The notes under the pieces were generated by a model. That model made no database searches and was not told the DNA's origin. It was given only the letters and a program-made list of their open reading frames with translations. A program made the translations under genes and the position numbers. From Malacoraja senta (taxonomy: Eukaryota), in NCBI GenBank assembly GCA_038087875.1, contig CM075977.1:229338001-229402000 (forward strand): 64,000 bases of DNA, in the 5' to 3' direction. Shown one piece after another: positions 30,950 through 63,220 of this stretch. Positions within the stretch are counted from its first letter, which is position 1. The number at the start of each line of letters is the position of its first letter.

Positions 30950-31030
30950 TGCAGAGGAAATAGAAGGCACCAAGAAAAACCAACTGAATCAGAAAGGCAA
31001 GGCAAGGCTCGGGAAGACTGGAATCCGACA

Positions 31031-31569: not shown

Positions 31570-31702
31570 CGGCTCATTTAAATATCAATGAAGGAGCACA
31601 ATGTATGTGCAGCACATATGAAACAAATTCCACGTCCGTGGTTGATATTTATAAAATTGAAATCTTCATGGCGAACGAAAAGTGCAACTACACGGAAATC
31701 AT
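31570..31702 (+). CDS. Gene C exon 2: (A)AHLNINEGAQCMCSTYETNSTSVVDIYKIEIFMANEKCNYTEI(I)
   Basis: ttttacag| and AT|gtaaga, 133 nt, CMC and Cys3 present. Confidence 0.92.
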
Positions 31703-31951
31703 GTAAGAATTGTTCATGCATTTAAATTTTCATGCTTATATTTCAATGGGTGGGATTCGTGATAATGTGGAGCAATTGTATTAATTACATTTTTATCTGC
31801 AGATCATCTGCCACATGTGAAAGGAACAAACAAGAGAACTCTGACAAACATTTTTTAATTAAATGATGTTGCAATTTATCCCCCCCCCCCCCCACCTCCT
31901 CAAAAAAAATCTAATAACTAGAAAGATTAAATGTCTCCCTTTTTCTTTCAG

Positions 31952-40158: not shown

Positions 40159-40222
40159 ATGAAGAACAAACAAATGCTGAAGCCTTTTGCAGCAATTCTG
40201 CTTTTCACAATTCTTGCAGCAG
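40159..40222 (+). CDS. Gene D putative exon 1 (MKNKQMLKPFAAILLFTILAA)
   Basis: ATG, basic n-region and hydrophobic h-region, exactly 64 nt, G|gtgtgt phase-1 donor. Joining to 52203 gives an A-D-A cleavage-type motif. The pairing across 12 kb is inferred. Confidence 0.65.
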
Positions 40223-43200
40223 GTGTGTTGTTTAATTATTACATTTTTCATTGTGCAATGTGATGAGTAAATATTTCCTGTTTTCTTAGCAATAGAAACC
40301 TCAAAAGTACAAAAACAAAAACATATTGAAGACATTTTCTTCCTAAATAATGAGAAACAACAACAATGAGTTGATTGTTTGTGGAGACATTGGTACAAGC
40401 ATGTGCAGAAATCATTGATTAGACTAGTTGTGAATTGATTTGTAGACTGTACTACTACTAGAGAGGCACAGTGGTGCAGCTGGTAGAGCTGCTGCCTCAC
40501 AACACCAGGTTCGATCCTGACCTTGGGTGCTGTCTGTGTGGTGTTTGCATGTTCTTTCTGTGATCGCTCGGATTTCCTCTCGGTGTTCTGGTTTTCCCCC
40601 ACATTCCAAAGACGTGCGGGTTTGTATGTTAATTTGCCTCTGTAAATTGTCCCTAATGTGTAGAGAGTGGATGAGAAAGTGGGATAACATAAAACTTGTG
40701 ATAGTCGATATATCGATAGTCAGCATGGACTCGGAAGGCTGAAGGGCCTGTTTCCATGCTATATCGTCTGCTCATGCAGTCTCTTTGCAGATGAATATGA
40801 TCACCTCAGCATGCAGCGGTCCCATTGATTTATGAATGATAACATTGTTCTTGCTGTGTATTCCATGGCCATGAATGTGCATCTTTGGCATATCTTGGCT
40901 TTTTAAAATAAAAGTTACTAATTATGTAATTCCTCACAAACTTGAGCAACCACTTGAAATGAGTTTCTGTGACAGAGGTTTCAGTTTCTACTCACCATAA
41001 ATTAACTACAGATTACCATTAGTTCCAGTGTCAATCTGTAACACATGAACCTAAAGAAAGGGAATATTACCACCTCATCAATTGAGGGGCTAGGATTCTT
41101 TATCTCCATTTAGTTATTTAAGCAAAGTGTCATAACAGGTCCTAAAGCATTCCATATTGATATCCATACCCAAGCAGATAGGCCACTGTTATATTGGGCC
41201 TCCTTGAGGATTAATTAAGACTTTTTGAAATAAATAAAACAAAAAATCAACTAAAAAACTCAATGAAAAGATTAAAAATTCAAGTAAAATGCAATTGTTG
41301 AATATAAATGTATAAATAAATGGTCAGATTCACAAAAAATGATTACAAATTTTAAAATCACATATAAAGCAAATTTAATAATGAAGTTCTGTTTCTTAAA
41401 ACTACTACATTTCAAATACTCCAAAATACATTATTTCATGATTTAATTCAAATTGTAAAATAATTTATATAATTTTTCAGAGCTCTGCTATCACCACATT
41501 ATTTTAGATGGGATAAACCAGATTACCACAAATCCGTCAGCTTAGATAATGTTTTGGTCCCTTTGTTTGTGATGAATGTTTATGGCATGTTGGTGTCACT
41601 GGGAAAGCCAGCACTCATCTGCCAGAAGTTACAGAGATCTGTGAAAGAGAGTGATTGAGCAACTACTGTTCACATTCTATGTCCATTTAGATATCAAGTA
41701 AAATCTCCACATTCGTACTTGCTACATTGCTATGTAGCAATGTTGGTTGTGATGAGGGTGCAGGGGCTTCAGGAAAACAGGCAAGAACTGATTGTGGCAA
41801 CATGTACATTTGTACACTTTGGTAGAAAAAATTGAAAGCCAGTCTTTTTAAGTAATTAAAGATTGAATGACGTGATAGAGGAATCTGAGTGACCATTTAC
41901 ATGAATTACTAAAAGATAGCATGCAGGCACAACATGTATTGAGTTATGTTGGCTTTTATTGCAAGAGGATTAGAGTACAAAAATACAAATGGCTTAAAAC
42001 AATTATCTAGGCTTACTCAGGCCACACTTAAAATATTGTGTACAAGCCTGCCTAATTTAGGAAGGGTAGATTCGCCATACAGAAAATGCAACAAAGGTTC
42101 ACCAGGCTGATTCTAATGAGAGAGGTTGTGTTGTACGAGGTTTGATGAAACAGATTGGGACCAGGCTCTCTTACATCAATCTCTTAGATTAATGAGAATA
42201 AGAGATGATCTCACTGATACATATGAAATCTTTATGAGACTTGACAGGATATATTTAGGGATTGTTTCCCTTGACTGGGGAGGCTAAAACCAAGGTTTGA
42301 TCATTCAGGTATCAGATGACAAAAAAATCACCCAGAATATAATAACCGTTAGGAATTCTCTATCCAAGGAATCTGTGGAAGAGAGTCACAGAGAGCAATA
42401 GATGTCTAGATATTAAGGGAATGAGGTTGGTACAAGAAAACAATGTTGAGGGGAAAGAACAGCAATGACCTTAACGAACAACAGGGGCACAAGTGTACGT
42501 AAGGCCGACTCCAGTTTCTTTTTCCTATGTTCTTAACATTTTAATAAACATTTTCTCTTTCAGAGGATCTTTAAATGGTTTTACTCATGGGTCATATAGA
42601 GCAATTTACCATTTGTAACGAAGACTTGAATAAAGTTATTATTTTCTGAATAAACCGAGGTATATTATTTTGCACAGTGACACCTGCTATGTGGTAGATA
42701 GTTCTGATATCTGTAATAAATGTTGCAAACACTAATTTCTCATTAAACTACGCTGATGAGGTCTGGGCATTCAGGGATGGTGTTTACAATCATCTAGAAT
42801 TCTGCTCACCTGATTTTCCTTTCCCATTGTCTGTTCTTGCCAGCCACTGCCAACCCCAGCGCACCAATATCCTTTTATTAAAGATCATCGATCCTTTGTA
42901 TTTTGCTCTTATTAGCAATAGGTTGAGAACATGCAGTTGATGAGCATAACTGTCTCTTCTTTTTTTTTAAATATTATTATTTTATTAGAAGTACAATCGT
43001 ATGGCACCAAAGTGCCTAATATATATTTTCATAATACATTTTATGTACAGCTTCTTATATTTTTTATTATAATAAAGAAGAATAAGAAAAAGAAATTAGA
43101 TAATAAAGTATAGAAAAATGTGAGATATATAGTGTGTGAAGAAGAAGAAAAAAGAATGAAAGGAGAAAGTTAAAGAAAAGAAAATGTGGAAAAGAGAGTA

Positions 43201-44658
43201 AATTTTTTTTAAAAAGTAAGGAGATCATTATTTATAATCTTGACCATCCCCCACCCAGTCCCGAGACAGTTAGCTTTTACAATTGTGTTGCACCATATGA
43301 TTCCAAAAAGACGACAAATGGAGACCAACTCGTTATGAATTGGTCTGATTTATCTATTAGGAGGAATCGCATTTCCTCAAGATGTGCAGTGTCCAACATG
43401 CTTGCAATCCACATTTTGAGCGTTGGTATTGGTGTATTTTTCCAAAATTTAAATATTAATTTTTTTGCTATTATTAAACCATAATTATAAAATAAATTTT
43501 GAGATGAATTCAATTTATTCCCATTTTCCATTACTCCAAATATAATCAATTCAGTATTAGGTTCCATTCTTATCTTAAATAATTTTGTAAATATTTCAAA
43601 AATATCACTCCAAAATCTATAAAGTTTTATGCAGGAAACAAAAGAGTGTGTTATAGTTACGTTTTGGGATAAACACTTATCGCAAATGGGGGATATATTT
43701 GGATAGAATTTATTCAATCTTGTTTTTGAATAATATAATCTATGTAAAATTTTAAATTGAATTAAATTATGTCTTGCATTAATCGAACATTTGTGAATGT
43801 ATATCAAATACTTTTCCCATGTAACCTTCGTAATTTTTATCGTTAATTCCCGTTCCCACTCTTCTCTAAGTACCTCTGTCGATGGTAGGTCTATATTTAA
43901 AATACTATTATATAAATATGATATAAATTTTTGTGAGTCAGCTTTAATATTCATTGCTTCTTCCAATAAGTCAGGAGTTATTTTTTGATATCCTTGTATG
44001 TATTTCTTCATGAAATCGCAAATCTGAAGATATTTAAAATAATGGTTGTTTTTCAATTTAAATTTTAATTGTAATTGTTGGAATGATAATAAATTTCCCA
44101 TTTCATATATATCCCCGATCCTTTTAATCCCTAAACTTTCCCATTGATTATATGTTTTATCAATAAGAGATGGTTTAAATAAAGGATTATTCGTTATTGG
44201 CATTAACAATGATAGGTTTCTTAATTTTAAGGATAATTTTATTTGTTTCCATATTCTTATTGTATCATGTATAATTGGGTTCTTTTTATATATTGTATTG
44301 TTCCATTTTTTCGGGGAGAAGAGGATCGTTCCTATATTACAAGGAAAACAATCCTCTTTCTCCATTTTTATCCATTCTGTCTGTTGGGTAGAACTGTCCA
44401 ACCAATAAATTATATTCTCAATATGCACTGCCCAATAATAATACAAAAAATTCGGGAGTGAAAGTCCCCCGACATCTTTTGGTTTACATAAAAGGCCTGT
44501 CTCACGAGTCTGCGGTCATTGGCGGCGAAACAGGAACTATCTACCGCTCCTGGGCCGCCAGAGACCGCGGGCTCGGTCAAACGCACAATTCCAGGGCCGT
44601 GCGGCGTTGTTCCCAACACCGCACGGTGCTAAATAAAAACCAACACTGTCCAAAAATA

Positions 44659-47600
44659 CAGTGGCTTGCAAAAGTATTCATACCCCTTGAACTTTTCCAC
44701 ATTTTGTCACGTTACAACCACAAACGTAAATGTATTTTATTGGGATTTTATGTGATAGACCAACACAAAGTGGTGCATAATTGTGAAGTGGAAGGAAAAT
44801 GATACATGGTTTTCAAATTTTTTTACAAATCAAAAACTGAAAAGTGTGGCGTGCAAAAGTATTCAGCCCCTCTGAGTCAATACTTTATAGAACCACCTTT
44901 CGCTGCAATTACAGCTGCAAGTCTTTTGGGGTATGTCTCTACCAGCTTTGCACATCTAGAGACTGACATTTTTGCCCATTCTTCTTTGCAAAATAGCTCA
45001 AGCTCAGTCAGATTGGATGGAGAGCGTCTGTGAACAGCAATTTTCAAGTCTTGCCAGAGATTCTCAATTGGATTTAGGTCTGGACTTTGACTGGGCCATT
45101 CTAACACATGAATATGCTTTGATCTAAACCATTCCATTGTAGCTCTGGCTGTATGTTTAGGGTCGTTGTCCTGCTGGAAGGTGAACCTCCGCTCCAGTCT
45201 CAAGTCTTTTGCAGACTCTAACAGGTTTTCTTCCAAGATCGCCCTGTATTTGGCTCCATCCATCTTCCCATCAACTCTGACCAGCTTCTCAGAAAATAAT
45301 AGCAAAAACATTAGCCAATAGATTAAGCAAGTATGTTAGTAGACTAATACATGAGGATCAAACAGGATTTATACCTAAGAGACACTCATTTAATAATTTG
45401 AGACGTTTGCTTAACATAATGCATTCACATAAATCTTATGACCAAGAGTTAGCTATCATCTCACTGGACGCAGAAAAAGCGTTTGATCAAGTAGAATGGG
45501 ACTATATGATCAAAGTATTGCAAAAATTCCAATTGGGAGAAAACTTTATTGCATGGATAAAACTACTATATAACAAACCTACGGCTAGAATACTAACTAA
45601 TAATATATTATCTTCAAAATTCGAATTATCTAGGGGCAACAGACAAGGATGTTCACTATCACCGCTGTTATTTGCTTTGGTAATTGAACCCCTTGCTGAA
45701 AAAATAAGAACACACTCGAATATTCACGGTTATAACACAAAATATTCAAACAACAAACTATCCCTATATGCTGATGATGTACTACTGTACATCACAAAAC
45801 CACAAATTAGTATACCAAATATATTAAACTTAATTGAGGACTTTGGATCCTTTTCAGGATATAGAATAAATTGGAACAAAAGTGAAATTATGTCGATTAA
45901 ACCAAAAGATTCAACACATCTCAGGAAATTCCCTTTTAAAATAGCTATGGAAAAATTCAAATATTTAGGAATTGAGATTACTAGAAATTACCATGATATG
46001 TTTAAAGCTAATTATAATCCCCTACTTAAGAAATTAAATAATCTGATTAAATTTTGGAAAACACTTCCGATGTCCTTAATAGGTAGGATAAATGCTATAA
46101 AAATGATTTTCTTACCACAAATCCTTTACCTATTTCAATCAATACCTATATATCTCCCAAAAAAGTTTTTCAAAAAACTGGACTCAGACATTACAAATTT
46201 TATATGGGATTACAAATCCCACAGAATACAAAGAACACACCTTAACAAACGAAAAGAGTTGGGGGGTCTAGCGCTCCCTAACTTTATGTATTATAACTGG
46301 GCAGTAAATATTAAAAATATGATTCACCTGCTGGACAATTCTGCCCAGCAGGTGGACTGGATTATAATGGAAAAAGGGGATTGCTCCCCGAATAATATAG
46401 GAGCGATTATTCTCTCTCCAATAAACTTGAATAATAAAAATTATAATAAAAATCCAATTATATATAGCACTATTAGAACATGGAAGCAAATAAAACAGAA
46501 TCTAAAATTAAGAAACCTATCTCTCTTAATACCAATAGTCAATAACCCATCGTTTAAACCTTCAATCATAGATAAAGCATTTATACAATGGGAAAGAATG
46601 GGAATTAAAACGCTCGAAGATCTGTATGAATTAGAAAAATTACTATCATTCCAACAACTACAACTGAAATATAATTTGAAAAATAATCAATATTTTAAAT
46701 ATATACAAATCTGTGACTATTTGAAAACACACACAAAAGATTATTATAATATGCCTTCCGACTTACTAGATGAAGCAATGAAGACAAAGGCGGAATCAGC
46801 TAATTTAATATCATACTTATATAATATCATCTTAAATATAGAAATACCCACAACAGATGGAATTAGAAGAGATTGGGAACAAGATCTAGGTATAAAAATT
46901 TCAAAAGAGAGTTGGGATAATCATTTATTACAGGTGCATAAATGCTCGATCAACGTACGACATACGCTTATCCAATTTAAAACATTACATAGATTATATT
47001 ATTCAAAAACCAAACTAAATAAAATCTTTCCTAACGTCTCACCAATCTGTGATAAATGTATATGTCAAGAAGCTACCATAGCACATTCTTTTGTTTTTTG
47101 TACAAAAATCCAAAAATTCTGGTTTGAAATATTTGATATTTTTTCAAAATTAATCAAAATAAAACTGGTACCAAAACCAGAATGGATTATTTTTGGAATA
47201 TCGGAAGGTATTCCTGAATTAAACGTGTATCAGAAGAATTTACTCAATTATGGGCTAATAATGGGAAAAAAGCTTATACTTAAATTCTGGAAAAATGCGC
47301 CCACACCAACAATAAAAATGTGGACATCAAATATGTTGGAAACATTACATCTGGAAGAGATGAGATTCCTCCTAGTAGGCAAAGCAGATCAATTTCAAAA
47401 GACGTGGTCTACGTTTTTGGACCTATTACAAGCATGAGGTGCAATAGTAATTTAGAAAAACAAATAAATAAATAAAAGGTATCTGGACCTGGTAATGGGA
47501 GGTAAAATAAAAATAGACTTGGTTGGTAGTTCCTTCTCTATGAAGTATGGTATAAGAGTCATAATAGAGCGATTGTTCCTTCTTTCTTTCTCTTTTTTTT

Positions 47601-48852
47601 CTAGGGTCTATTTTCTAACTTTACTTCCTTCTCTAACCTCTTTTCTAAGGGGCTTTCTTTTCCCAACACTCTTTTGCACTTCACAACCTTTGCGCACTTT
47701 CTTCACTTTTCTTACTTCTTTCTTTTTCTTTCTTAAAGTTTAAAAAAGTGAAGCGGTACAAAAAATGTATTAATATATACGTGTTGTACATTACTGTAAT
47801 CTACCGTACTTCTAAAAAATAAAAAATATTAAAAAAAAAAATAAAAAAAAACTCTGACCAGCTTCCCTGTCCCTGCTGAAGAAAAGCATCCCCACAGCAT
47901 GATGCTGCCACCACCATGTTTCACAGTGGGGATGGTGTGTTCAGGGTGATGTGCAGTGTTAGTTTCCGCCACAAATAGCGTTTTGCATTTAGGCCCAAAA
48001 CTTCAATTTTGGTCTCATCTGCCCAGAGCACCATCCTCCACATGTTTGCTGTGTCCTCCACATGGCTTGTGGCAAACTGCAAACGGGACTTCTTATGGCG
48101 TTTTTTCCAACAATGGCTTTCTTGTTGCCACTCTTCCATAAAGGGCCGATTTGTGGAGTGCACGACTAATAGTTGTCCTGTGGACAGATTCTCCCACCTG
48201 AGCTGTGGATCTCTGCAGCTCCTCCAGAGTTACCATGGGCCTCTTGGCTGCTTCTCTGATCAATGCTCTCCTTGCCAGGCCTGTCAGTTTAGGTGGACGG
48301 CCATGTCTTGGTAGGTTTGCAGTTGTGCCATACTCTTTCCATTTTCGGATGATGGATTGAACAGTGCTCCGTGAGATGTTCAAAGCTTGGGATATTTTTT
48401 TATAACCTAACCCTGCTTTAAACTTCTCCACAACTTTATACCTGACCTGTCTGGTGTGTTCCTTGGGCTTCATGATGCTGTTTGTTCACTAATGTTCTCT
48501 AACAAACCTCTGAGGCCTTCACAGAACAGCTGTATTTATACTGAGATTAGATTACACACAAGTGGACTCTATTTACTAATTAGGTGACTTCTGAAGGCAA
48601 TTGGTTGCACTGGATTTTATTTAGGGGTATCAGAGTAAAGGGGGCTGAATACTTTTGCACGCCACACTTTTCAGTTTTTTATTTGTAAAAAAATTTGAAA
48701 ACCATGTATCATTTTCCTTCCACTTCACAATTATGCGCCACTTTGTGTTGGTCTATCACATAAAATCCCAATAAAATGCATTTACGTTTGTGGTTGTAAC
48801 GTGACAAAATGTGGAAAAGTTCAAGGGGTATGAATACTTTTGCAAGCCACTG
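44659..48852 (-). mobile_element. Tc1-family (DD34E) transposon with long IR/DR termini, split by an L1
   Basis: TA TSDs and about 212-bp TIRs starting CAGTGGCTTGCAAAAGTATTCA with an internal direct repeat. Paired-like HTH (48093-48473), WADETK, QQDNDPKH and SPDLNPIENLW motifs. Confidence 0.95.
45289..47850 (+). mobile_element. Inner 5'-truncated L1 with a 679-aa open ORF2 segment (45398-47437)
   Basis: Poly-A tail and 16-bp TSD AACTCTGACCAGCTTC (45273-45288, 47850-47865). RT and CxxC...H domains are uninterrupted. Confidence 0.95.
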
Positions 48853-51800
48853 TATGTTCCTACCGCACAGCCGCCGCCAGTGAGGCACGAGTGCGGCACG
48901 GCCGCCACCACAGCCGCCGCCAGTGAGGCACGAGCGCCGTGAGTCGAACCTGCACCGCCACAGCCTCCGCCAGTGAGGCACGTGTGCGGCATGGCCGCCG
49001 CCACAGCCGCCGCCAGTGAGGCACGTGTGCGGCACGGCCGCCGCCACAGCCGCCGCCAGTGAGGTACGTGTGCGGCACAGCCGCCGACAGTGAGGTACGT
49101 GTGTGGCACGGCCGCCGCCACAGCCCCGTGATCCGAAAGACGTCATCAGCCGAAACCGCAAGCTCGTTGAACCGGCCGTACTTGGCCCCCCGCGCAGCAT
49201 CCGTGCGGCGCTCTCGTGGTTGCCGTGCGGTCCCCTCTTCCGGCGACGCCGCGCTTCACCGCCAATGACCGCAAACCCGTGGGACAGAGCCTTAAGTGTT
49301 TTTTTTTAATTCTATGTGATTTATAATCCCAAATAAAATGAGTAATATTAGAGTCTAATTTTTTTTTAAAGTATTTTGGTATATATACTGGTATAGATTG
49401 AAATAGGTATAATAATTGTGGTAGAAAGATCATTTTTATAGCATTTATTCTACCTATTAATGATAAAGGAAGTGTTTTCCAAAATGTAATCAGTATATTA
49501 AGTTTATTTAATAAAGGTATAAAATTAGTATTGAATAATGCTTTATATTTTCTAGTAATCTGAATACCCAATTATTTAAATTTTTCTGTTGCTATTTTAA
49601 AGGGGAACTTCAATAAGTGTGTGGATTCTTGAGGTTTTAACGTCATGATTTCACTTTTATTCCAACTTATTCTATATCAAGAAAAGGACCCAAATTCCTT
49701 TATTAAATTTAATATATTTGGTATGCTCGTTTGTGACTTTGTAATATATAAAAGTATATCGTCTGCATATAATGAAATGTTATTATTTGAGTCCCTAGTA
49801 TTATAGCCCTGAATATTAGGATGAATTCTTATACTTTCAGCCAAAGGTTCTATCACAAGGGCAAATAGCAGGGGTGATAACGCACATCCCTGCCTATTAC
49901 CCCTTGATAATTGAAACTTTTGAGATAACATATTATTAGTTAATATTCTTGCCATCGGTTTACCATACAATAATTTTACCCATGTAATAAAATTCTCTCC
50001 CATATTAAATTTTTGCAGTACTTTGTATAAGTACTGCCACTCTACCTGATCAAATGCTTTCTCTGCGTCCAAAGAAATAATTGATATATCTTCTTCCTCC
50101 ACTTTATGTGAGTACATTATATTAAACAGGCGTCTCAAATTATTAAATGAATATCTTTTGGGTATAAACCCCGTTTGATCAGGGTTTATCAATTTACTAA
50201 TATATTTGCTTAATCTTTTTGCTAAAGTCTTTGCTAAAATTTTCTGGTCTGTATTTAAAAGTTATATAGCTCTATATGAGCCCGGATCCTCTAAATCTTT
50301 TTTTTTTTTTTTTGGAATAAGCGTAATAGTTGATTCTGCTAATGTTTCAGGTAGTTTATTTTCTTTAAAAGCTTGAGTATATAAATTATATACATAAGGA
50401 GTTGTTATCTCATGAAATTTTTTATAAAATTCATTACTAAAACCATCTGGTCCCGGTGTCTTGCCATTTTTCAACGATTTTATTGTTTCACCTATTTCTT
50501 CAATTGTAATTTGAGCACCAAGTTCCTCTTGTTCCAAAAGGTCAAGTTTTGGAAGATTACAGTTATCTAAAAAAAATTTAATTTTACTATCTTCTATTTT
50601 AGTTTTAGATGTATATAAATTTTAATAAAATTGAGCAAATCTTTTATTAATATCTTTAGATAGTATTAGTAATTCACCTTTCTCTGATTTCATTTTAGTT
50701 ATAGTATTTTCCTTTCCTTGTTTTTTCAATTGACGAGCTAAAAGCTTATGTGGTTTGTCACCAAACTCAAAATGTTCCTGTTTTGTAATTTTGTAATCTT
50801 ATTACTCTTGCCGATAAAATTCGATTAAGTTTAAATTTCAGTAATATTATCTTATTATGTTTATCTGTAGTGGAGTCTTTAGCATTATCTAACTCTAACT
50901 GTCTAATTTCTTGTTCTAACAACATTCTGTCTTATTCTTTTTATTTTGAAAAATTTGATATGAAATTATAATTCCTCTAATAAATGCCTTAAAAGTTTCC
51001 CATAATAAAGAAGGCGAAGTACCTGGTATATCATTTGTATCAAAAAAAAGTTTCATTTGTTGTTTTAAATATTGATAACCTTGTGTGTCATTTAAAATAT
51101 GTGTATTAAACCTCAAAAAAAAAATCTTACCCGGCATTCCCTCGAATTTTACTGACAATGTCAATGCAGAGTGATCAGAAATACTACTAATGTGGTATGT
51201 TGAATTAATTGTATGTGGCATTAATTTCATATCCACTAAAAAATAATCAATTCTTGAATAAGTTTTATGTACCGAAGAGTAAAACGAGTATTCCCTTCCA
51301 ACTGGATTAGCAGATCTCCATACATCTGTTATATTAGTATTTTTTATATATGTATTTAGAAGTTCACTAGTCTTAGATTTTAAATTACTCCTCTTTTGTT
51401 TTACTGATTTGTCTAGATATGAATCTAAAACACAATTGAAGTCCCCCCCCCTATTATCACATTCTGGTAATTAAACTCTGATATCTATAATTTTATCAAA
51501 AAATTTGGGGTTGTCAAAATTCGGTGCGTAAATATTTATCATAGTTAGTGGGGTTGCATAAATTTCTCCCGAGACTCTAATATACCTTCCCTCTTTATCT
51601 GATATAGTATTCTTTAATTTAAAAGGTATACCTTTTCGAATGAGAATAGCCGTACCTCTAGATTTAGAAGTAAATGACGAATAGTATGTTTGACCTATCC
51701 ACTTCGCCTTTAATCTCATTTGTGTTTGTTGTTTCATGTGAGTTTCCTGTAAAAACATTATGTCGCTGTTCATAGATTTTAGTTGAACTGTCTTAACTGT

Positions 51801-52202
51801 CTTAACTGTATATAGACACAAAGAGCTGGAGTAACTCAGCGGGTCAGGCAGCATCTCTGGAGAAAAAGGACGTGTGACTTTTCGGGTTGGGACCCTTCTT
51901 CAGACTGTTGTTTCAGTCTGAAGAAGGTACCCGACCCAAAACGTCACCTATCCTATTTCTCCAGAAATGCTGCCTGACCCACTAAGTTACTCAGGCACTT
52001 TGTGTCTATCTTTGGTATAAACCAACACCTGCAGTTCTTTGTTTCTATATCTTATCTTTACATTCATTGTTTTTTCTGTACTTGCAAGCCAATTAACAGA
52101 TACATTCAATTTGCACCTGGATTTGCTGGACATTATAACTTCCACACTTATAATAAATGCTACTGATTCAGAAAGCTAATAACCACGTCTATTTTCTTAC
52201 AG

Positions 52203-52329
52203 CTGATGCTGAAAGCCACCTTCTAGTTAAATCACAATGTAAATGCGTGACTGTCACATCCAAAACAGTTGTTTCTGAATTGCCTAATGGGGCACGCGTG
52301 GAGCAGCTCATGAGGGATATACACATTGT
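52203..52329 (+). CDS. Gene D exon 2: (A)DAESHLLVKSQCKCVTVTSKTVVSELPNGARVEQLMRDIHI(V); CxC present, no Cys3
   Basis: tattttcttacag| acceptor, GT|gtaagt consensus donor, 127 nt, phase 1 to phase 2, open frame. Confidence 0.8.
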
Positions 52330-53222
52330 GTAAGTAAATGCATTTTCTTATGTGAATGTATCCACATGGTTGAAAACAAGAAAAGACTAATTATTGGAGA
52401 CTGCAGGCAATTTTGTGCTGTGGTTCATCGAATCGATATCACAAAAAGGAGGCAATCAATACATCAGTCAGAGTCAGACCATAACACAACACAACCCCTA
52501 ACAACCATTCTGATTCCTTTCTTGAGTTATTTCCTGCTTGCTCTATATTCCCCGAAGACCCTGTCTGATTACATCTTCCTGAACCTTACACATGTTTCCT
52601 TTTACTTTTTGACCAATTTTGCAACCTCTCTTCTCACCCAAGATTCTCTTACTTTGCCACCTTTCTCCCTCCTCCTTGCTGGAACATGCTGATCCTCAAC
52701 TCTGATCAACTGATATTCTTTAGCTAAATACCAAATATCTGATGTGGACTTCTCCATAAATGCTGCTCCCAATATACTCTCCGAAGCTCCTGCCGAATAA
52801 TGTTATACTCTGCCTTATCCAAATTTAGTACTTTTGCCCCTAGGTCCCGACTTTTCCCTCTTCATAACTATCTTAAAACTTATGGAGTTGTGATCACAGT
52901 TCCTAAAATGTTCTTCCACAGAAACACCTGGCCAGGCTCATTTCCCAATACAGGTCCAGTATGGTCCCTCCACTAGTTGAACAATCCGCAAATTGGTTTA
53001 AGAAACCCTTTTGGATACACCTTACAAATTCTGCCCTGTCCTAATCTTTTGCACTAAGGAAATCCCAGTCAATATTGGGGAAATAAAAGTCACTCATTAT
53101 AACAACCCCATTCTTATTGACTCTTCCCATAGTCTGTCTACATATCTGTTCCTCTATCTCCTGCTGGCTATTGCGAGGGCTATAGTATAATTATACAATT
53201 ATACAATACAATTAAACAATTT

Positions 53223-54020
53223 ATTTATTGTCATTTGAACCTCAAGTATGAAGTTCAAACAAAATTTGGTTTCTGCAGTCATACAACAAGAAAAGAACCA
53301 AGACACACAACCAACACAATTTACACAAACATCCATCACAGTGAATCTCCTCCTCACTGTGATTGAAGGCAAAGTCTTGTCTCTCCCCTGTGTTCCATTC
53401 TTCTCCCGATGTTAAAGCCCCGGTGGGCGATAGCAAGTCCCGCGGCAGTTAAAGCCGCGCCGGGCGATGTAAGGCCCCGCTCCGGGTCTTAATGTTGGAG
53501 CCCCCGGCGGGCGATGGCAAGTCCCGTGCCGGGCGATGTAAGGCCCCGCTCCGGGTCATTTCCAACCCCGCAACTCGGGCGGGAGAAGCTGCCATTGCGG
53601 GAGCTCCGAAAAGCGGTCTCCCACCAGGGACCCGCGAGCTCCCGATGTCACCGTCCACCGGACCTGCGGCTGGAGCCCCCGAGCTCCGGAGTCGGGTCGC
53701 AGCCGCGCGCCGCCACAACTCTCCATGCTCCGAAGCCGTCCAGCCCCACGATGGTAGGTCCGCAGGCTCCACGACTGGAGCCCCCAGGTCGTTCCGGTTG
53801 GAGGCCGCTCCACGGTGCTAGGCCCCAACGACAACGGAGACCCGACAGGGAAAAGGTCAGGTCCCCCGTACAGGGAAGAGATTTTAAAAGTTTCCACCCC
53901 CCACATATACACAGCTAAAAACAATATAAAAACCACAACAAACTTATACATTCAACTGGACAAAAATAAAAAAGAGATGGACGGACTGCAGAGGCTGCTG
54001 CGAACGTCGGTCGCGCCACC
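53223..54020. repeat. GC/CpG-rich interspersed repeat with an internal direct duplication; unclassified
   Basis: Abrupt GC-rich block with repeated gccgggcgatgtaaggccccgctccgggtc. Confidence 0.5.
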
Positions 54021-55182
54021 CAAATCCCATCAGAGTGATTGCGTGTTTCTTATTTTTAAGCTTTACTCATATTGCCTCAGTGGATGAGCCCTCTGTGTCT
54101 TCTCTGAGTGCCACTGTGACATTCTCTCTGATTAGTAATGCAACTCCTCCACTTCTTTACCTCCCTCTCTATTACGTCTGAAACATCAAAACCCTGAAAA
54201 CATTGTGCTGTCAGTCCTGTCCCTCTCGCAACCAAGTCTCCATAATGGCCACAACATTATAATTCCATGCCACTACGAGATGCATTATCCTGACATGCTC
54301 CAATTTTTCGTGGGTGCTTATTTCTCTAACTAAACTGAACACTGTTGCTGCACAAAGATAAAAACTGAAAATAGTGGTATCCATAGTTAAGATTACCACA
54401 GAGAACTGAACATGTCTTCACTGAATGAAGAGTTAGCTGTTGTTTTGTTTGCTGGGTGGGCAATTCATATGAAAAGTAGTAGGGGTGGCACAGTAGTAGA
54501 GTTGCTGCCTTACAGCGCTAGTGACCTGCATTCGATCCTGATTATGGGTGCTCTCTCTGTGGAGTTTGTACGTTCTCCCTGTGACCATGTGGGTTTTATC
54601 CAGGTGCTCTGGTTTCCTCTCACACTCCAAAGATGTACAGGTTTGTAAATTATTCCGTATGTTGTAAGAAATTGTCTTTTTTTATTTATTTTTTTATTTT
54701 ATTTATTAGAAGTGAGTACATTACATTTTGATGGTACCTTTTTACAGGTTCCCAGAATTATTAAAAAAATAAAAATAAAAATAAAAAAAATAAAAAAATT
54801 GTCACTAGTATGTAGGATATTGTTAATACAGTATATGGGGTGATCGCCGGTTGACACGGACTCGGTGGGCTGAAGGGCCTGTTTTCTAAAGTAATGTCTA
54901 GTGACTATAAGAAGTACTAGGTCATGGAAAAGAATAGATGCTATCTAATCATCTGTGAAAGACTAATCCATCCCTGAACGTCCTAACATAATGCAATCCC
55001 TTTCCATTTCATTCCTCCTATTTTGCGTGAAAGACAACTTCCTGGAATAATTTCCAAGAGATAATCAATTTACACGCTGACTTAAAAGTTCACTGCATAT
55101 TATTTTCTGGAGCAACCTTATATCATCCAAAACAGACTCAGTTTCAACTTGGTATAGGCTTAATACACGGTGATGTTTGTTA

Positions 55183-55786
55183 AGGCTCTGTCTTACCTGT
55201 TTGCGGTCATCGGCGGTGAAGCGCGGCGTCGCCGGTAGCGGGGACCGCGCGGCAACGGCAAGAGCGCCGAGCCTATCCACTGGAGCGCCGCACGGATGCT
55301 GCGCGGGGGCCGAGTAATTCAAACACGGCGGGTCCCACGTGCTTGCGGTAAGTTAAAAAAAGGGCGGGCCGACTGCGATGACGTCGGCCCGCCGCACGTG
55401 ACTCACGAGCGGCGGCTGTGGCAGTGGCCGTCCTGATCGCGGTGCTGTAGCGGTGGCTGTGCCTGCGGCCATGCCGCACACGTGCCTCACTGGCGGAGGC
55501 ACGTGCCTCACTGGCGGAGGCTGTGGCAGTGGAGGTTTGACGCACGGCGGTCGAGCCACACTGGCGGCGGCCTGTGCGGGCGGCCGTGCCGCACTCGTGC
55601 ATCACTGGTGGAGGTTGTGCGGTAAGATTATAGTTTTCAACATTGTCGGTTTTATTTTAGCACCGTGCGGTGTTGGGAACACCGCCGCACGGCCCTGGAA
55701 TTGTACGTTCTCACGAGTGCGCGGTCTATGGCGGCAGATTCTTCCCGTTTCGCCGCCAATGACCGCAGACTCGTGAGACAGGCCTT
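55183..55786. mobile_element. Uninterrupted 604-bp copy of the Harbinger-type MITE, opposite orientation
   Basis: TTA TSD (55180-55182, 55787-55789) and the same TIRs. Shows the empty TA site where Tc1 sits in the other copy. Confidence 0.82.
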
Positions 55787-56066
55787 TTACTTAACGGGTA
55801 CATCATTATGCAGGATGCCCTTCTTTTCTATTGCTGCAGTACTTACTACTTGGCCATAGGCAATAATCTTCAAATGATTATTTTAATTCATGACTTTCTT
55901 CCTTCAATTACTGATATTGCCTACCCACATCAACAATTATGTGGTTGGACAATCACAGCTGTCCATGCTGTCAGCTGTAAGCTGTCCATGTGCAGAATTA
56001 CTTCATGGCATTTGGCTGCCAATTTCTGGTAATGTTAAAATGGTCTTAATTGTTATTTTATTGCAG

Positions 56067-56147
56067 AGTTCCCACGAGGAGCAGAGAGAACATTTCAGAT
56101 CCAACCTCCCCTATTCGGAACAAGTTTGTCTACAAAATTTCAGATTT
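56067..56147 (+). CDS. Gene D exon 3: VPTRSRENISDPTSPIRNKFVYKISD; no Cys4
   Basis: ttattttattgcag| acceptor, phase 2. Aligns ungapped with the chemokine R-E-x-C-L-D-P-x-A-P-W motif. TT|gtatga phase-2 donor. Confidence 0.7.
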
Positions 56148-58424
56148 GTATGATTTATATTTTTCTCTCTTTTTTTTGCAATATATAATTAGAGCTTAGT
56201 GTTTATGAAAGAACTCCAGATGCTGTAAAAATCGAAGGTAGACAAAAATGCTGGAGAAACTCAGCAGGTGAGGCAGCATCTATGGAGCGAAGGAATAGGT
56301 GACGTTTCAGGTCGAGATCCTTTTAATTAGAGCAGGTTTCAGAACACAGCCTACACCTGGCATCTGTTAACTTCTATGTATTTGTGTGTCACGTTGCTTT
56401 TTTTTTCGTATGGCCGTAAGGTAATTCGCATACCACTTTGGTACACGTGACAATAAAAGACCTTTGAAACTTTTATGCTACAATCAGGCCTCCTTGAGCC
56501 ATTTCTGAATATTCAGTAACAACTGAATAACTCAGGCTGAACGGTGGCGTCATTAGTAGAGCGGCTGTCTTCTGCTCCTGTGATCTTCGACCCAGACCTC
56601 GGGTGCTGTTTCATGGAGTTTGTACTATTTCTCTGTGACTAAGTGGGATCCTGAGTATTCTGGTTTCCTCCACGTTTATAAGTCATGAAGGTTGGCGGGT
56701 TACCAGGCCATTCTCTATTACCGCTAATGTGTAGATGAGTGGTAGAATCTGAGGAAGCGTTAATAGTGAATGTGGGGAGAATAAAATGAATTAGTGTTAA
56801 ATAATTAGGATTTGTGTAAAAATGGATGCTTAATGGTTGCTGCTGACTTGGTGAGCCAAAAGACCTATTTCCCTGCTGTTTTTCAATATGACTCCATAAT
56901 TGTATGAAAGCTTCAGTTGGATATTTTGGCAAAAAGGAGACCTAAAGGTATATTCAGATTTGTTTTGGTTTTTAATATTGCCAGAGGAACCATCTTCTCA
57001 GATAAGTGAATGGGTAAAATAGTCAAAACAACTGAGGAAATCATCAGAAAAAGACACAAAATGCAGGAGTAACTCAGCGGGTCAGGCAGCATCTCTGGAG
57101 AACATGGATGTGATGTTTTGGGTCAGGAGCCTTCTGCAGACCTTCTTGTCTCTACAAGGAAATTAGCAGAATGTTTTCATAATGAGGGTTATTAAGATTT
57201 GTGATACATCATTATACATAATGTGAAAGAGCAACTTCCAATAACAATAGAAACTATATTTAAAGAGGACTAATTTGCAGAGTTTGGGAGAAAAAGCTGG
57301 AAGTGGAAATGAACTTCACATTTATTTTGAGACATCACAACATGGCAGTCTGAATGATTTCCAATGTTCCAAAGTTGTGCTCAATGGCATATTGACTATA
57401 GTGAAAGGACAACCAAATAAGTGGTGATATGTGGTTTAGATTAAAACCAGAATTTTCCTAACAGTTCATGTTTCCATGGCTCAGATATAACTGATGGAAG
57501 CTTGGTGGACGTTTCCTTTAAATGCATAAGGGAATCTTTTATATATTTGATAAATAATTCCAAGACAATTCTTTGTCATGTTTTCATTCATTTTGCATTG
57601 GTTTGACGTATCGACTTCAGGTGAAATGATAGGGAACACCTAAATTTACACAGTTAAATCCTTTTATGGCTTTCTTCCAATGTAAGTATGACATAGGATA
57701 TTGAGGCACTGGTAAGGAAAATGGAGCCATATTTCAGGTGTAGGCATCTGGGATCAAGTGAATATCTTGAGGAGTATAAGAGATGTAGGACTATACTGAA
57801 GAAGGAAATCAGGAGGGCAAGAAGAGGAACTGAATAGTAAGTTTGTGGACTACATCAATATTGGTGCTGTAGTGGATAATGAAGACAGTTATCTAAGATT
57901 TCAACAGGAGCTGGATGATTTGGAGGAGGGAGCCAAGGAATTGCAGATGGAATTTAACTTTGACAAGTGCCTATTGCAAGTTAAACCTGGGCATGATATA
58001 CACAGTAAATGGTAGGACCCTGGAGAGTATAGTAGAATGCAGGGGCTTAGTTACACGTACATAATTCCCTGAAAGTGGCAACACAGATAGAAAGGGGGGG
58101 GGGTGAAGGTGTTTGGCACACTTCTCTTCATTGGTTAGGGGCTATTTCCATTGACTATAGAAATGTGGACGTCATATTACAGTTCTATAAGAGAACAAGC
58201 TACCAGAATGAGTTGTAGAGGTGGATATAGTTACAATGTTTAAAAACATTTGGACAGATAAGTGGGTAGAAAAGATTCAGAGGGATAGGGGAAACTGGGC
58301 TAGCTCAGTTTGAATGTTGGTCAGCATGAGGGAGTTGGGCTGAAGGGCATATTTATGTGTGGCATAGCTCCATGACTGTGTTAATGAGAAATATATCTTT
58401 GATTGATCATATATTTTGTTGCAG

Positions 58425-58521
58425 CTGCAAGAATTGCAACCAAAAGCCAACTTTACCTGGTGAACCCCAATGCAAACCCCCACCTCCCCCTGCAGACACC
58501 TGCTACGGCCGTGACATCTAG
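58425..58521 (+). CDS. Gene D putative exon 4: (F)CKNCNQKPTLPGEPQCKPPPPPADTCYGRDI*
   Basis: atattttgttgcag| acceptor, phase 2 matches exon 3, TAG stop, AATAAA at 58728-58733. Confidence 0.62.
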
Positions 58522-60711
58522 TGAATGCCAATACCGTAAAAACACCATGGGAACCAAATGGATGCTGTGTGGAATCCCAAACGCCACTGGAATCCACAGC
58601 CTACAGCGCCCTCTACTGAAACATGATTCCGCCTCCATGTCAGATGTTTTTCCCATAACGACATTGTGTTTCTTAATGCATTTTTAGCTTTATATAGTTG
58701 CATTTGCTTTTTTATCTTCATTGAACAAATAAAATGCTTCCTTGCTTCAAAACTTGTTTTGTGCAAATCCCGTTCTTTGACTTGTAGCATCATTTCTAAT
58801 TTGTCATAGTTTGCTTTTACTTTTTTTGATGACAAACAAAATGAAGGCCACATGTCAATGCAGCAGACCACCACTCAGTAGGTTTTGTGGAAACGGGAGT
58901 TCCAGAAATATCTTAACATATGGGCCTGAATTCTGTAATCAGCAGCAAAGCAAAAACACCCACTATTCCAGGGAATTGCTGGTAAGTAGTGTCTTCAAGC
59001 GGACAGATACTCATAAGTCACAAACAGAATGCAAAAGGTGCAATTTTTGAAAAGTACTTCAAACAACATGCAGAGCACAAATGCATCAGAGAAGAGTCAG
59101 TGAATTTTATAAATATTTTTAAAATATTGTTTTCATTATTCCTATGTATTCATGGAACGAGCTGCCAGAGGAGGTTGTTGAGGCAGATATTATAACAACA
59201 TTTAAATACATTTGGACAGGCTGATGGATAGGAAAGGCTTAGAAGGATATGGGCCAAACACAGAGGTGAGACTAGTGTGGATGGGGCATCTTGGTCGACA
59301 TGGACAACGTGGGCCAAAGGGCCTGTGTTTATGCTGTATGATTGACTATATGACTCTAAGAGATGAACAGTGGAGGATATGGAAGAGGACATAATTAGGC
59401 ACACAAACTCTGTTATCACCCGTGTTATATTCCACATGTGTGGAGATGCTGCGAATACTCTCAAATTCATGGTGTATAATACAAAATGTCAAAAGTGTAG
59501 TCATCGATGTAACAGTAAAGTACAGGTTGAAGGTGGAGTAGTGGAAAGAGCCAGGCCAGTTGTGGAGGGGGAGGGGGAGGGGGAAATGAAGGAGGCCAGA
59601 AAGAGTTAGGCCAGTGATGGAGGAGGGGGCAAAGGAGCTCTGACAGAGATGAAGGAGAGGGAGAGTCAGGCCAGGAAATAAGGAAGGTGAAAGAACCAGA
59701 CTAGGATTAGAGTAAAAGGAAAGTGCCAGGTCAGGGATAGTGGAGGGGGGAGGTTCGGAGATACTCAAGGGGTCTGTCTCCCAGGTGCAGGAAAGTTGAC
59801 ATTTTCAATTGAAGTTTTCCTTTCCCCTGGATCCCTATGAATTACTTAAAATCTTAAACTAAAAAGCAACATTTTAAGGAACAATATTTCTGCATTATTA
59901 TTGTGTACGAGCCTTAGATGTTGTTCACCTTACCAAGCAGGAACAAACTTCCAATTCCTGATTTGTGTGTTTTGACATATGAATATTTTTAGTTTAGTTT
60001 AGAGATACAACATGCAAACAGACCCGATTAGCAAGTTTGCTGATCACACTAAAATAGGTGGTACCATGGACAGTGAAGTTGGTTATTAAGAATCACAGCA
60101 CGATCTTGATCAGCTGGGCAAGTGGTGCAAGGAATGGCTAATGGAGTTTAATTCAGATTTACAAGGACATTGCCAAGACCCGAAGGGCTGAGCTATAGGG
60201 AGAGGTTGGGGAGGCTAGGACTTTAATCCTTGGAGCACAAGAGGCTGAGGGCTGATTTGAGAGAACTGTTTAAAATCATACGGGGAAGAACTTTAATGGC
60301 ATTGACGTGCAGAGACCTTGGAGTCCAAGTTTATCTATATTACTAAAAGTAAGATCTTGACCGCTTTTGACTCACGGCGATGTGATTTCCGAAGAACGCC
60401 GCCACTTACGGCCATCATCTTTGGCCACCTCGCTCAGAGCCCCCCTCCGCAGGAGTGGACCAGAGGATTTTTCCTATCGATGAAAAATCAGAGAGATATT
60501 AATGTTTTTTAAAATTCGCCATTCTCTCTGCTGCCCCTGCTGGTGGGAGGGGGAGGGACTATAAAACCCGGAAGTGGTGTGCCTCACTCAGTCTCTGCAA
60601 AATGCAGGAAGTGAGAGGGTCACGTCTCTCTGAGCTCTGAATAACACTTAACACATGTCTACTCAACTGTGAGTGCCCTTAATGTGGTTTGAAAATGAAA
60701 ATATGGTTGGT

Positions 60712-62185: not shown

Positions 62186-63220
62186 TACACAGTAAATGTT
62201 AGGACCCTAGAAAGTATTGTAGAATGCAGGGGCTTAGAGTTACAGGTATATAGTTCCCTGAAAGTGGCAACACAGATAGAAAGGGGGGTGGAGATGAAGA
62301 AGGAGTTTGGCACACTTCCCTTTATTGGTTAGGGGCATTAACTATAGAAATTTGGACGCCATGTTGCAGTTCTATAAGAGAACGAGCTACCAGAATGAGT
62401 TCTAGAGGTGGATATAGTTAAAATGTTTAAAAACATTTGGACAGATAAGCAGATAGAAAAGGTTCAGAGGGATAGGGGAAACTGGGCTAGCTCAGTTTGA
62501 CATGTTGGTTAGCATGAGGGAGATGGGCTGAAGGGCATATTTATGTGCGGCATAGCTCTATGACTGCGTTAATGAGAAATATATCTTTGATTGATCATAT
62601 ATTTTGTTGCAGCTGCAAGAATTGCAACCAAAAGCCAACTTTACCTGGAGAACCCCAATGCAAACCCCCACCTCCCCCTGCAGACACCTGCTACGGCTGT
62701 GACATCTAGAGAATGCCTATTCCGTAAAAACACCATGGGAACCAAATGGATGGTGCGTGGAATCCCAAACGCCACTGGAATCCACAGCCTACAGCGCCCT
62801 CTACTGAAACATGATTCCGCCTCCATGTCAGATGTTTTTCCCATAACGACATTGTGTTTCTTAATGCATTTTTAGCTTTATATAGTTGCATTTGCTTTTT
62901 TATCTTCATTGAACAAATAAAATGCTTCCTTGCTTCAAAACTTGTTTTGTGCAAATCCCGTTCTTTGACTTGTAGCATCATTTCTAATTTGTCATAGTTT
63001 GCTTTTACTTTTTTTGATGACAAACAAAATGAAGGCCACATGTCAATGCAGCAGACCACCACTCAGTAAGTTTTGTGCGAACGGGAGTTGCAGAAATATC
63101 TTAACATATGGGCCTGAATTCAGCAGCAAAGCAAAAACACCCACTATTCCAGGGAATTGCTGGTAAGTAGTGTCTTCAAGCGGACAGTTACTCATAAGTC
63201 ACAAACAGAATGCAAAAGGT
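62186..63220 (+). repeat. About 1-kb duplication of 57999-59040 (CR1 remnant, gene D exon 4 and 3' UTR), offset 4188
   Basis: Colinear from tacacagtaaatg to cagaatgcaaaaggt. Confidence 0.95.
62613..62709 (+). CDS. Duplicate of gene D exon 4: (F)CKNCNQKPTLPGEPQCKPPPPPADTCYGCDI*
   Basis: Same acceptor, frame, stop and AATAAA. Two coding differences (GGT/GGA silent, CGT/TGT Arg to Cys). Confidence 0.45.

What the first reader, a model, noticed from the sequence alone, without database searches (positions are those of the whole stretch)
40159..58521. Gene D: a CxC protein that lost both partner cysteines and gained a Cys/Pro-rich tail
Seen in sequence: four exons (64/127/81/97 nt, phases 1-2-2) with canonical splice sites give an open 122-aa protein. 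It has a signal peptide, then QCKC, then Met (ATG 52310) at the Cys3 position and Ile (ATT 56092) at the Cys4 position. That Ile sits inside an N-I-S glycosylation sequon, and the conserved Trp is also Ile. The tail CKNC-x11-C-PPPPP-containing-x9-C brings the mature protein back to six Cys. Established: chemokine disulfides are C1-C3 and C2-C4; XCL lacks C1/C3 and zebrafish CX chemokines lack one N-terminal Cys. I know of no class that keeps C1/C2 while losing C3/C4. Inference: disulfides may be rewired to the tail, or this is a chemokine-derived protein with a new fold or function.
Basis: partly seen in the sequence, partly recalled or inferred. Interest (0 to 1): 0.9.

Follow-up and report, generated by a model that had tools for sequence, protein, structure and literature searches.

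The report
Skate antibody J chain gene
"Gene D" is the skate version of the J chain, the small protein that ties IgM antibodies into pentamers; a 2024 paper already showed that J chain descends from CXC chemokines, so the odd chemokine-like features are real but known.

Summary
Four exons (64/127/81/97 nt, phases 1-2-2, AG/GT at every site) give a 122-aa secreted protein with six Cys and an N-I-S sequon.

It is not a new chemokine class. It is immunoglobulin J chain (JCHAIN).
- Exon 3 alone passes the Pfam Ig_J_chain cut-off, and exon 2 hits the same profile colinearly.
- Both exons hit J chain in solved IgM/IgA structures.
- Seven skate proteins named J chain, from Amblyraja, Rhinoraja, Leucoraja and Raja eglanteria, are all 122 aa. 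They align without gaps and keep the same Cys, sequon and stop.

The six Cys are J chain Cys1-6. The CXC motif, 1-2-2 phases, CXCL linkage and rewired disulfides were published by Kawasaki et al. 2024 (PMC10801876).

The tail was shortened, not gained. Compared with sawfish, skates carry a 1-nt insertion that creates TAG just after Cys6. This removes about 54 residues and Cys7/8, and the lost coding sequence survives as a decayed relic in the 3'UTR.

A contig from a relative's run joins 56147>58425 exactly.

In this species the terminal exon is also duplicated.

Notes by the scan's first readers on this same window flagged the chemokine-like cluster and the exon duplication.

The parts
40159..40222 (+). 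JCHAIN exon 1: start codon and signal peptide (MKNKQMLKPFAAILLFTILAA plus 1 nt), GT donor
   Evidence: 20-21 of 21 residues are identical to other skate J chains.
52203..52329 (+). Exon 2 (127 nt): mature N-terminus with the CKC motif (J chain Cys1 and Cys2) and the first beta-hairpin
   Evidence: Pfam Ig_J_chain 21.9 bits, profile positions 2-37. PDB 9ec7_J J chain. The whole-library search returned only a basking-shark J chain.
56067..56147 (+). Exon 3 (81 nt): the most conserved J chain block, RENISDPTSP, carrying the N-glycosylation sequon (human Asn49 equivalent)
   Evidence: Pfam Ig_J_chain 38.1 bits against a cut-off of 27. Human J chain residues 41-66, E 1.4e-7. The X3 contig covers 56077-56147.
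58425..58521 (+). Exon 4a coding part (97 nt): F-CKNC...QC...PPPPP...DTCYGRDI plus TAG. Holds J chain Cys3-Cys6.
   Evidence: Aligns to every chondrichthyan J chain and, through sawfish, to human Cys69/72/92/101. The 56147>58425 junction lies in a relative's contig.
58522..58650 (+). 3'UTR relic of the lost C-terminal coding region (the Cys7...Cys8 hairpin and acidic tail), broken by indels
   Evidence: tblastn 34.3 bits against the sawfish C-terminus; 0 of 150 shuffles exceeded 18.1 bits. The DNA alignment with Pristis exon 4 shows a 1-nt insertion and deletions of 7, 18, 5 and 12 nt.
58728..58733 (+). AATAAA, the likely polyadenylation signal for exon 4a
   Evidence: Read from the sequence. 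Usage was not tested.
62613..62709 (+). Exon 4b: duplicate of the terminal exon with an intact acceptor and ORF. It differs by one synonymous change and R120C, which adds a seventh Cys.
   Evidence: It lies in a 1.05-kb duplication (57999-59053 and 62186-63235, 93.6% identical). Only one copy is present in Leucoraja locus L002.
9720..31703 (+). Upstream CXC chemokine-like genes on the same strand, with exon 2s at 9720-9845, 16318-16446 and 31575-31703. This is the CXCL cluster to which jchain is linked.
   Evidence: Regex and tblastn. Pfam IL8 scores 17.8 and 15.7 bits for the single exons, below the 21.3 cut-off, at profile positions 2-34.

Best explanation
Gene D is the immunoglobulin J (joining) chain gene of a skate. 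It lies downstream of, and on the same strand as, a cluster of CXC chemokine-like genes. The protein is secreted by antibody-producing cells. By homology with human J chain, Cys36 and Cys92 (J chain Cys2 and Cys3) bond to the penultimate Cys of IgM heavy-chain tailpieces. Cys34-Cys117 (Cys1-Cys6) and Cys95-Cys107 (Cys4-Cys5) form the intrachain bridges, and Asn72 carries the conserved glycan. Its role is to clasp the IgM tailpieces and fix the pentamer. The chemokine-like features (four exons, phases 1-2-2, CXC in exon 2, signal cleavage at the exon 1/2 border) are inherited from the CXCL ancestor of all J chains. Skates carry a shortened form. A 1-nt insertion directly after the Cys6 region made a TAG, which removed the C-terminal hairpin with Cys7-Cys8. 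In mammals that hairpin contacts the poly-Ig receptor. Shown here: identity, gene structure, Cys correspondence, the truncating insertion and conservation among skates. Inferred: the disulfide pairing, IgM binding and expression in this species.
For: Family identity. Pfam Ig_J_chain scores 38.1 bits for exon 3 alone (cut-off 27), with a colinear 21.9 bits for exon 2. Near-identical skate proteins score 78-84 bits full length. Both exons hit PDB J chains from IgM/IgA structures. An exhaustive search of 1.8 billion representatives with exon 2 returned one hit, a J chain.

Conservation among skates. Seven skate J chains are 122 aa and gapless against gene D, with 8-15 differences and identical Cys, NIS and stop. 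The Leucoraja locus has the same 64/127/81/97 exons, and Pristis has 64/127/81/259.

Cysteine map. Sawfish J chain aligns to human J chain over all eight Cys, and gene D aligns to its first six. The human disulfide map and Asn49 come from PMC8657937.

Truncation. The 1-nt insertion and later deletions are seen in the DNA alignment. The relic is significant against shuffles.

Transcription, linkage and charge. A spliced contig joins 56147>58425 with the frame and stop kept. Three CXC-like exon 2s lie upstream, as PMC10801876 describes for chondrichthyans. The mature pI is 8.6-8.8, in line with that paper's neutral or basic cartilaginous-fish J chains.
Against: No RNA run from the window's own species was available. 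The junctions 40222>52203 and 52329>56067 therefore rest on protein colinearity with relatives, not on reads. The one spliced contig comes from a relative and has a depth of about 4. dN/dS is only moderately below 1: 0.58 against Leucoraja (15 changes) and 0.49 against Pristis. Exon 4 alone has no Pfam or PDB hit. The AlphaFold model of a near-identical skate protein was unusable at pLDDT 53.5, so nothing structural was tested. Association with skate IgM was not tested here. The spliced 122-aa protein has no reference, so it was not run through Pfam as one piece; single exons and 93%-identical proxies were used instead.
Confidence: 0.95

Rival explanations
1. It is a working but atypical CXC chemokine, a new class that keeps C1/C2, lacks C3/C4 and signals through a chemokine receptor.
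For: It has a CXC motif in exon 2, 1-2-2 phases and a basic mature protein (pI 8.6-8.8). It is linked to CXC-like genes. [quoted passage not shown]
Against: No IL8-family Pfam hit appears even at E<=10 in near-identical proteins, while Ig_J_chain scores 78-84 bits. It is orthologous to proteins annotated or cloned as J chain. All six Cys map to J chain Cys1-6.
Confidence: 0.02
2. It is a decaying J chain pseudogene. The frameshift and premature stop inactivated it, and what remains is drifting.
For: About a third of the ancestral coding sequence has been lost, and its remains decay in the 3'UTR. dN/dS is 0.5-0.6. Other skate genomes hold several jchain loci (three in Amblyraja, two in Rhinoraja), so redundancy is possible.
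Against: The same 122-codon ORF, with all six Cys, the sequon, the splice sites and the stop, is intact at seven loci in four other genera. No long form was found in any skate. GenBank holds a Raja eglanteria J chain protein of this length (AAN62851). A spliced contig from a relative keeps the frame. The retained part is exactly the part that bonds to the heavy chains.
Confidence: 0.04
3. The mature mRNA of this species uses the downstream duplicate terminal exon (4b, 62613-62709) instead of, or as well as, 4a. That would give a protein ending CYGCDI with a seventh, unpaired Cys.
For: Exon 4b keeps the acceptor, the ORF and the duplicated 3' region. No reads from this species were available to decide.
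Against: Exon 4a comes first and carries its own AATAAA. All other skate J chains have Arg or Pro, not Cys, at position 120. Leucoraja has a single copy.
Confidence: 0.12

Closest known systems
Skate J chains: Raja eglanteria AAN62851, Leucoraja erinacea XP_055502907, Amblyraja radiata XP_032873082/873212/873228, Rhinoraja longicauda XP_078262610/078268268
   Same: All are 122 aa and align without gaps. They share the same six Cys, NIS sequon, PPPPP stretch and stop position, and are 88-93% identical. The Leucoraja gene has identical exon lengths.
   Different: They differ at 8-15 residues, so gene D is identical to none of them. Here intron 1 is about 12 kb against about 3 kb in Leucoraja. 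The terminal exon is duplicated only here.
Long J chains of other cartilaginous fish (Pristis pectinata, Mobula, Hypanus, Heptranchias, Pristiophorus)
   Same: Exons 1-3 are the same (64/127/81 nt in Pristis). Protein identity over the shared 122 residues is 67-81% (81% for Pristis and Mobula). The CKC and CKNC...C...DTCY pattern is the same.
   Different: They continue for about 54 residues with Cys7 and Cys8 and an acidic ...SMSDAP end. Their exon 4 is 259 nt against 97 nt here. Skates differ by a 1-nt insertion that creates TAG.
Human/mammalian JCHAIN (PDB 6kxs_J, 6ue7_D and others)
   Same: Same Pfam family, four exons with phases 1-2-2, the conserved RENISDPTSP block with the Asn49 glycan site, Cys1-6, and linkage to CXCL genes.
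   Different: The human protein is acidic and has the C-terminal hairpin (Cys108-Cys133) that contacts pIgR. The skate protein is basic and lacks that hairpin.
CXC chemokines (CXCL8 family, Pfam PF00048)
   Same: Gene architecture, the position of the CXC motif, signal cleavage at the exon 1/2 border, and chromosomal neighbourhood (PMC10801876).
   Different: There are no C1-C3/C2-C4 disulfides and no detectable sequence similarity. The function differs: Ig polymerisation rather than receptor signalling.

Membership tests
Immunoglobulin J chain (Pfam PF15097, JCHAIN) | Sequence match to the family profile above the curated cut-off | tested here: met
   Exon 3 alone scores 38.1 bits against a cut-off of 27, and exon 2 adds a colinear 21.9 bits. 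Skate proteins 93% identical to gene D score 78-84 bits. The spliced gene D protein was not scanned as one piece because it has no reference.
Immunoglobulin J chain (Pfam PF15097, JCHAIN) | Conserved N-glycosylation block (R-E-N-I-S-D-P-T-S-P) | tested here: met
   RENISDPTSP is at residues 70-79 and is identical to human 46-55 in the alignment. PMC3743840 calls NISDP conserved in all vertebrates studied.
Immunoglobulin J chain (Pfam PF15097, JCHAIN) | Cys2 and Cys3, which bond to the heavy-chain tailpieces, plus the Cys1-Cys6 and Cys4-Cys5 pairs | tested here: met
   Positions 36 and 92, and 34/117 and 95/107, align to the corresponding Cys of sawfish and human J chain. The bonds themselves were not tested.
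Immunoglobulin J chain (Pfam PF15097, JCHAIN) | C-terminal hairpin with Cys7-Cys8 (the pIgR-contact region of tetrapod J chain) | tested here: not met
   It is absent because the ORF stops five codons after the Cys6 codon. The relic sits in the 3'UTR. The same loss is seen in all skate J chains. The eight-Cys set is also incomplete in J chains of other vertebrates (Xenopus, nurse shark, coelacanth; PMC3743840), so this is a lineage variant rather than grounds for exclusion.
Immunoglobulin J chain (Pfam PF15097, JCHAIN) | Four exons, phases 1-2-2, linked to a CXCL cluster (downstream of cxcl genes in chondrichthyans) | tested here: met
   criteria from PMC10801876.
Immunoglobulin J chain (Pfam PF15097, JCHAIN) | Covalent component of polymeric IgM, expressed in plasma cells | not testable with these tools
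   Reviews report this for nurse shark (PMC4279169; PMC6795676). It was not examined for skates here.
CXC chemokines (Pfam PF00048 IL8) | Four Cys forming C1-C3 and C2-C4 | tested here: not met
   There is no Cys between residues 36 and 92.
CXC chemokines (Pfam PF00048 IL8) | Sequence match to the IL8 profile | tested here: not met
   No IL8 hit at E<=1 for the exons or at E<=10 for full-length skate proteins. By contrast, the neighbouring exon 2s of genes B and C score 17.8 and 15.7 bits.
CXC chemokines (Pfam PF00048 IL8) | CXC motif in exon 2 of a four-exon 1-2-2 gene within a CXCL cluster | tested here: met
   This is the basis on which PMC10801876 assigns J chain to the CXCL lineage by descent.

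The most novel reading that the evidence does not exclude
Skates carry a naturally minimal J chain. One inserted base just after Cys6 cut off the C-terminal hairpin in the ancestor of Rajiformes. The shortened protein has been kept in at least five genera, and a fossil of the lost coding sequence is still readable in the 3'UTR. In this species the terminal exon has also been duplicated, which offers an alternative end with an unpaired seventh Cys. I did not find the mechanism of truncation or the exon duplication described in the papers available here.
Probability: 0.45. Interest if true: 0.3.

Novelty: already known. Interest (0 to 1): 0.17.

Why it matters
The main value is a correct label. 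This is JCHAIN, not a new chemokine class, and the neighbouring atypical chemokine-like genes should be read as the CXCL cluster that flanks jchain in cartilaginous fish. There is also a small addition. Skates show that the first six Cys and about 100 residues have been kept intact across at least five genera. That fits the view that the C-terminal hairpin serves mucosal transport, which elasmobranch J chain is thought not to serve. A skate IgM/J chain structure would be a natural minimal model, and PMC10801876 itself says that a shark J chain structure 'might be revelatory'.

Tried and rejected
Exon 4 alone gave no hit in Pfam or PDB. Its identity came only from full-length relatives.

Reads were limited. 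Read laying allows one call of 6 kb, so only the exon 3-4 interval was laid. Three of the four runs showed nothing but interspersed repeats, and one run gave the spliced contig. A second run search with exon 4 plus the 3'UTR found no RNA run of the same species.

The AlphaFold2 model of Amblyraja J chain, built with a 19-sequence family alignment, reached only pLDDT 53.5 and pTM 0.27. J chain folds on the Ig tailpieces. I therefore ran no fold search, because its matches would be meaningless.

Some sources were unavailable. The supplementary tables of PMC10801876 are not held. PMC4198949 and PMC4046329 are not held. I did not look up Hohman et al. 2003, so I could not check whether the skate truncation was discussed there.

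The spliced 122-aa protein has no reference, so I did not type it into any database tool. Single exons and near-identical database proteins were used instead.

My first dN/dS run against Pristis used wrong exon 2 coordinates and was redone.

I rejected the reading 'new chemokine class' and the reading 'tail gained'.
Full report
Observation. Assembled in a script, they give 64/127/81/97 nt, with AG before each internal exon and GT after each donor. Phases are 1-2-2, the ORF is 369 nt and the protein is 122 aa, with Cys at 34, 36, 92, 95, 107 and 117. QCKC, Met at ATG 52310, Ile at ATT 56092 inside N-I-S, and the Cys/Pro-rich end are all present. If exon 3 were read through its donor, it would stop 17 codons later.

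Identity. The exon 3 peptide alone matches Pfam PF15097 (Ig_J_chain) at 38.1 bits, above the curated cut-off of 27, on profile positions 41-66. The exon 2 peptide hits the same profile colinearly on positions 2-37 at 21.9 bits. Exon 4 alone hits nothing. Against solved structures, exon 3 aligns to human J chain 41-66 (VPLNNRENISDPTSPLRTRFVYHLSD) with E 1.4e-7. Exon 2 aligns to the N-terminus of J chains, including the CKC motif.

An exhaustive HMMER search of 1.84 billion representatives with exon 2 returned a single significant protein. The search for homologous proteins names it 'immunoglobulin J chain-like [Cetorhinus maximus]'. Using it as the query gave 14 cartilaginous-fish J chains, all carrying PF15097. 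Two of these are skate proteins of 122 aa. Cluster look-up added more: three loci in Amblyraja radiata, two in Rhinoraja longicauda, one in Leucoraja erinacea (XP_055502907) and Raja eglanteria AAN62851. All seven align to gene D without a gap and differ at 8-15 residues. They share the six Cys, the NIS sequon, the proline run and the stop position. Full-length skate proteins score 78-84 bits on Ig_J_chain and show no IL8/chemokine hit even at E<=10. Gene D is therefore the skate JCHAIN gene. Earlier notes of this scan also call this genome a skate. The window is 90-94% identical in non-coding DNA to the Leucoraja erinacea jchain locus, so it belongs to another skate species.

Splicing evidence. 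Only 6 kb could be laid, and only once, so I chose the exon 3-4 interval because exon 4 had no homology support of its own. In run X3 a 276-nt contig lies on 56077-56147 and continues at 58425-58621, which is the predicted junction exactly. Its ten differences keep the frame and the stop: I to L in exon 3, two synonymous changes and one Gly to Thr codon in exon 4, and the rest after the stop. It comes from a relative ('organism A'). It shares some variants with exon 4a and others with the duplicate 4b, as expected for an outgroup to a recent duplication. Everything else laid was interspersed repeat. No RNA run from the window's own species was offered. The other two junctions rest on gapless colinearity with the skate proteins, and on identical exon lengths in the Leucoraja (64/127/81/97) and sawfish (64/127/81/259) genes, all with AG/GT.

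What the cysteines are. Sawfish J chain (176 aa) aligns to human J chain over its whole length: CKC to CKC, SDFCKDC to SDLCKKC, then Cys5, DTCY to ETCY, NKEC to RNKC and NPEC to PDAC. Gene D aligns to the first six of these. In human J chain the intrachain bridges are Cys12-Cys100, Cys71-Cys91 and Cys108-Cys133. Cys15 and Cys69 bond to the penultimate Cys of the IgA and IgM tailpieces, Asn49 carries the glycan, and the C-terminal hairpin contacts pIgR (PMC8657937). By homology, gene D should form Cys34-Cys117 and Cys95-Cys107, offer Cys36 and Cys92 to the mu chains, and carry a glycan on Asn72. This pairing is inferred and was not tested. An AlphaFold2 model of the Amblyraja protein with the family alignment was too poor to use (pLDDT 53.5). 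This is not surprising, since no structure of J chain without IgA or IgM has been reported.

The tail was shortened, not gained. Non-skate batoids (Pristis, Mobula, Hypanus, Narcine) and squalomorph sharks (Heptranchias, Pristiophorus) continue past DTCY for about 54 residues with two further Cys. Translating the skate 3'UTR recovers that lost sequence in pieces:
- In the coding frame, HGNQMDAVWNPKRHWNPQPTAPSTET matches sawfish NGRQMDAVLNPECLRHEQNHWIPEPTQPPIET at 34.3 bits, and none of 150 shuffles exceeded 18.1 bits.
- In the +1 frame, SSECQYRKNTMG matches NKECLYHKINLG and HDSASMSD matches YDPSSMSD.

I fetched the sawfish and little-skate loci and aligned exon 4 DNA. Where sawfish reads GAC AAC AAA GAA TGC, the skates read GAC ATC TAG nGA ATG C. 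One inserted base creates TAG directly after codon 122. Downstream there are deletions of 7 nt and 18 nt (the 18-nt one spans the old Cys8 region), a 5-nt deletion found only in this window's species, and a 12-nt deletion at the ancestral stop. The long form occurs in sharks, in other batoids and in tetrapods, so the short form is derived. Its presence in Rajidae and Arhynchobatidae dates it to an early skate.

The retained 122 codons are under moderate constraint. dN/dS is 0.49 against sawfish (15 synonymous and 27 non-synonymous changes) and 0.58 against Leucoraja (5 and 10). No Cys, sequon or splice site is disturbed in any skate copy.

Context. Three CXC chemokine-like exon 2s lie upstream on the same strand, at 9720-9845, 16318-16446 and 31575-31703. 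The latter two give sub-threshold but colinear Pfam IL8 hits. This is the arrangement that Kawasaki, Ohta, Castro and Flajnik (PNAS 2024, PMC10801876) describe for chondrichthyans, with jchain downstream of cxcl genes. That paper argues from synteny that J chain is a co-opted CXCL chemokine. [quoted passage not shown] It also notes that cartilaginous-fish J chains are neutral or basic and that the elasmobranch C-terminus is 'unique'. Gene D's mature pI is 8.6-8.8.

Reviews state that pentameric shark IgM depends on J chain, and that the poorly conserved C-terminus argues against mammalian-style mucosal transport (PMC4279169).

Extra feature. A 1.05-kb segment containing the terminal exon is duplicated, at 57999-59053 and 62186-63235, with 93.6% identity. 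Copy 4b keeps the acceptor and the ORF but has R120C. Copy 4a comes first and has its own AATAAA at 58728-58733. The Leucoraja locus has one copy within 10 kb downstream. Which copy is used here is untested.

Verdict. The gene and its chemokine kinship are already known. The truncating insertion, the 3'UTR relic and the exon duplication are small additions that I could not find described in the papers available here.

Noticed in passing
window 57999-59053 and 62186-63235: A 1.05-kb duplication contains the jchain terminal exon and its 3'UTR (93.6% identical). Copy 4b (CDS 62613-62709) is intact but has R120C. Leucoraja erinacea locus L002 has only one copy, so the duplication is young.
   Followed up: partly
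window 40223-52202 (intron 1), especially 42044-52044: Intron 1 is about 12 kb here but about 3 kb in the Leucoraja jchain gene. Roughly 10 kb (42044-52044) has no counterpart in L002, so it is presumably inserted repeats.
   Followed up: no
proteins P0001-P0005, P0007 (galeomorph sharks: Cetorhinus, Mustelus, Rhincodon, Scyliorhinus, Hemiscyllium): Their J chains read C-K-L where batoids, squalomorph sharks and tetrapods read C-K-C. They lack the second Cys of the CXC motif (J chain Cys2, one of the two heavy-chain-bonding residues), and they also lack Cys8. Pristiophorus has L at the Cys3 position.
   Followed up: partly
protein P0012 (Narcine bancroftii): The electric-ray J chain ends early (...HWIPKTRRSI, 162 aa). 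This is an independent, smaller C-terminal shortening that keeps Cys7 and Cys8.
   Followed up: no
window 9720-9845, 16318-16446, 31575-31703 (+): Three CXC chemokine-like exon 2s lie upstream of jchain. The first (gene A) has CRC but lacks the Cys3 seen in B and C (SRSYRTTEIM against STMCKYTEIM).
   Followed up: partly
window 61388-61900: A minisatellite of about 48-bp units (82-88% identical copies) lies between the two exon 4 copies. A second repetitive block lies at 60383-61356.
   Followed up: no
window 54400-54900, 56230-56320, 57060-57110, 59150-59240: Very high-copy interspersed repeats, with word depths up to about 4e5 in the runs laid. They account for nearly everything laid on introns 2 and 3 and on the region downstream.
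   Followed up: no
window 34469-34668: A 200-N assembly gap lies between chemokine-like gene C and jchain. It was left as it is.
   Followed up: no
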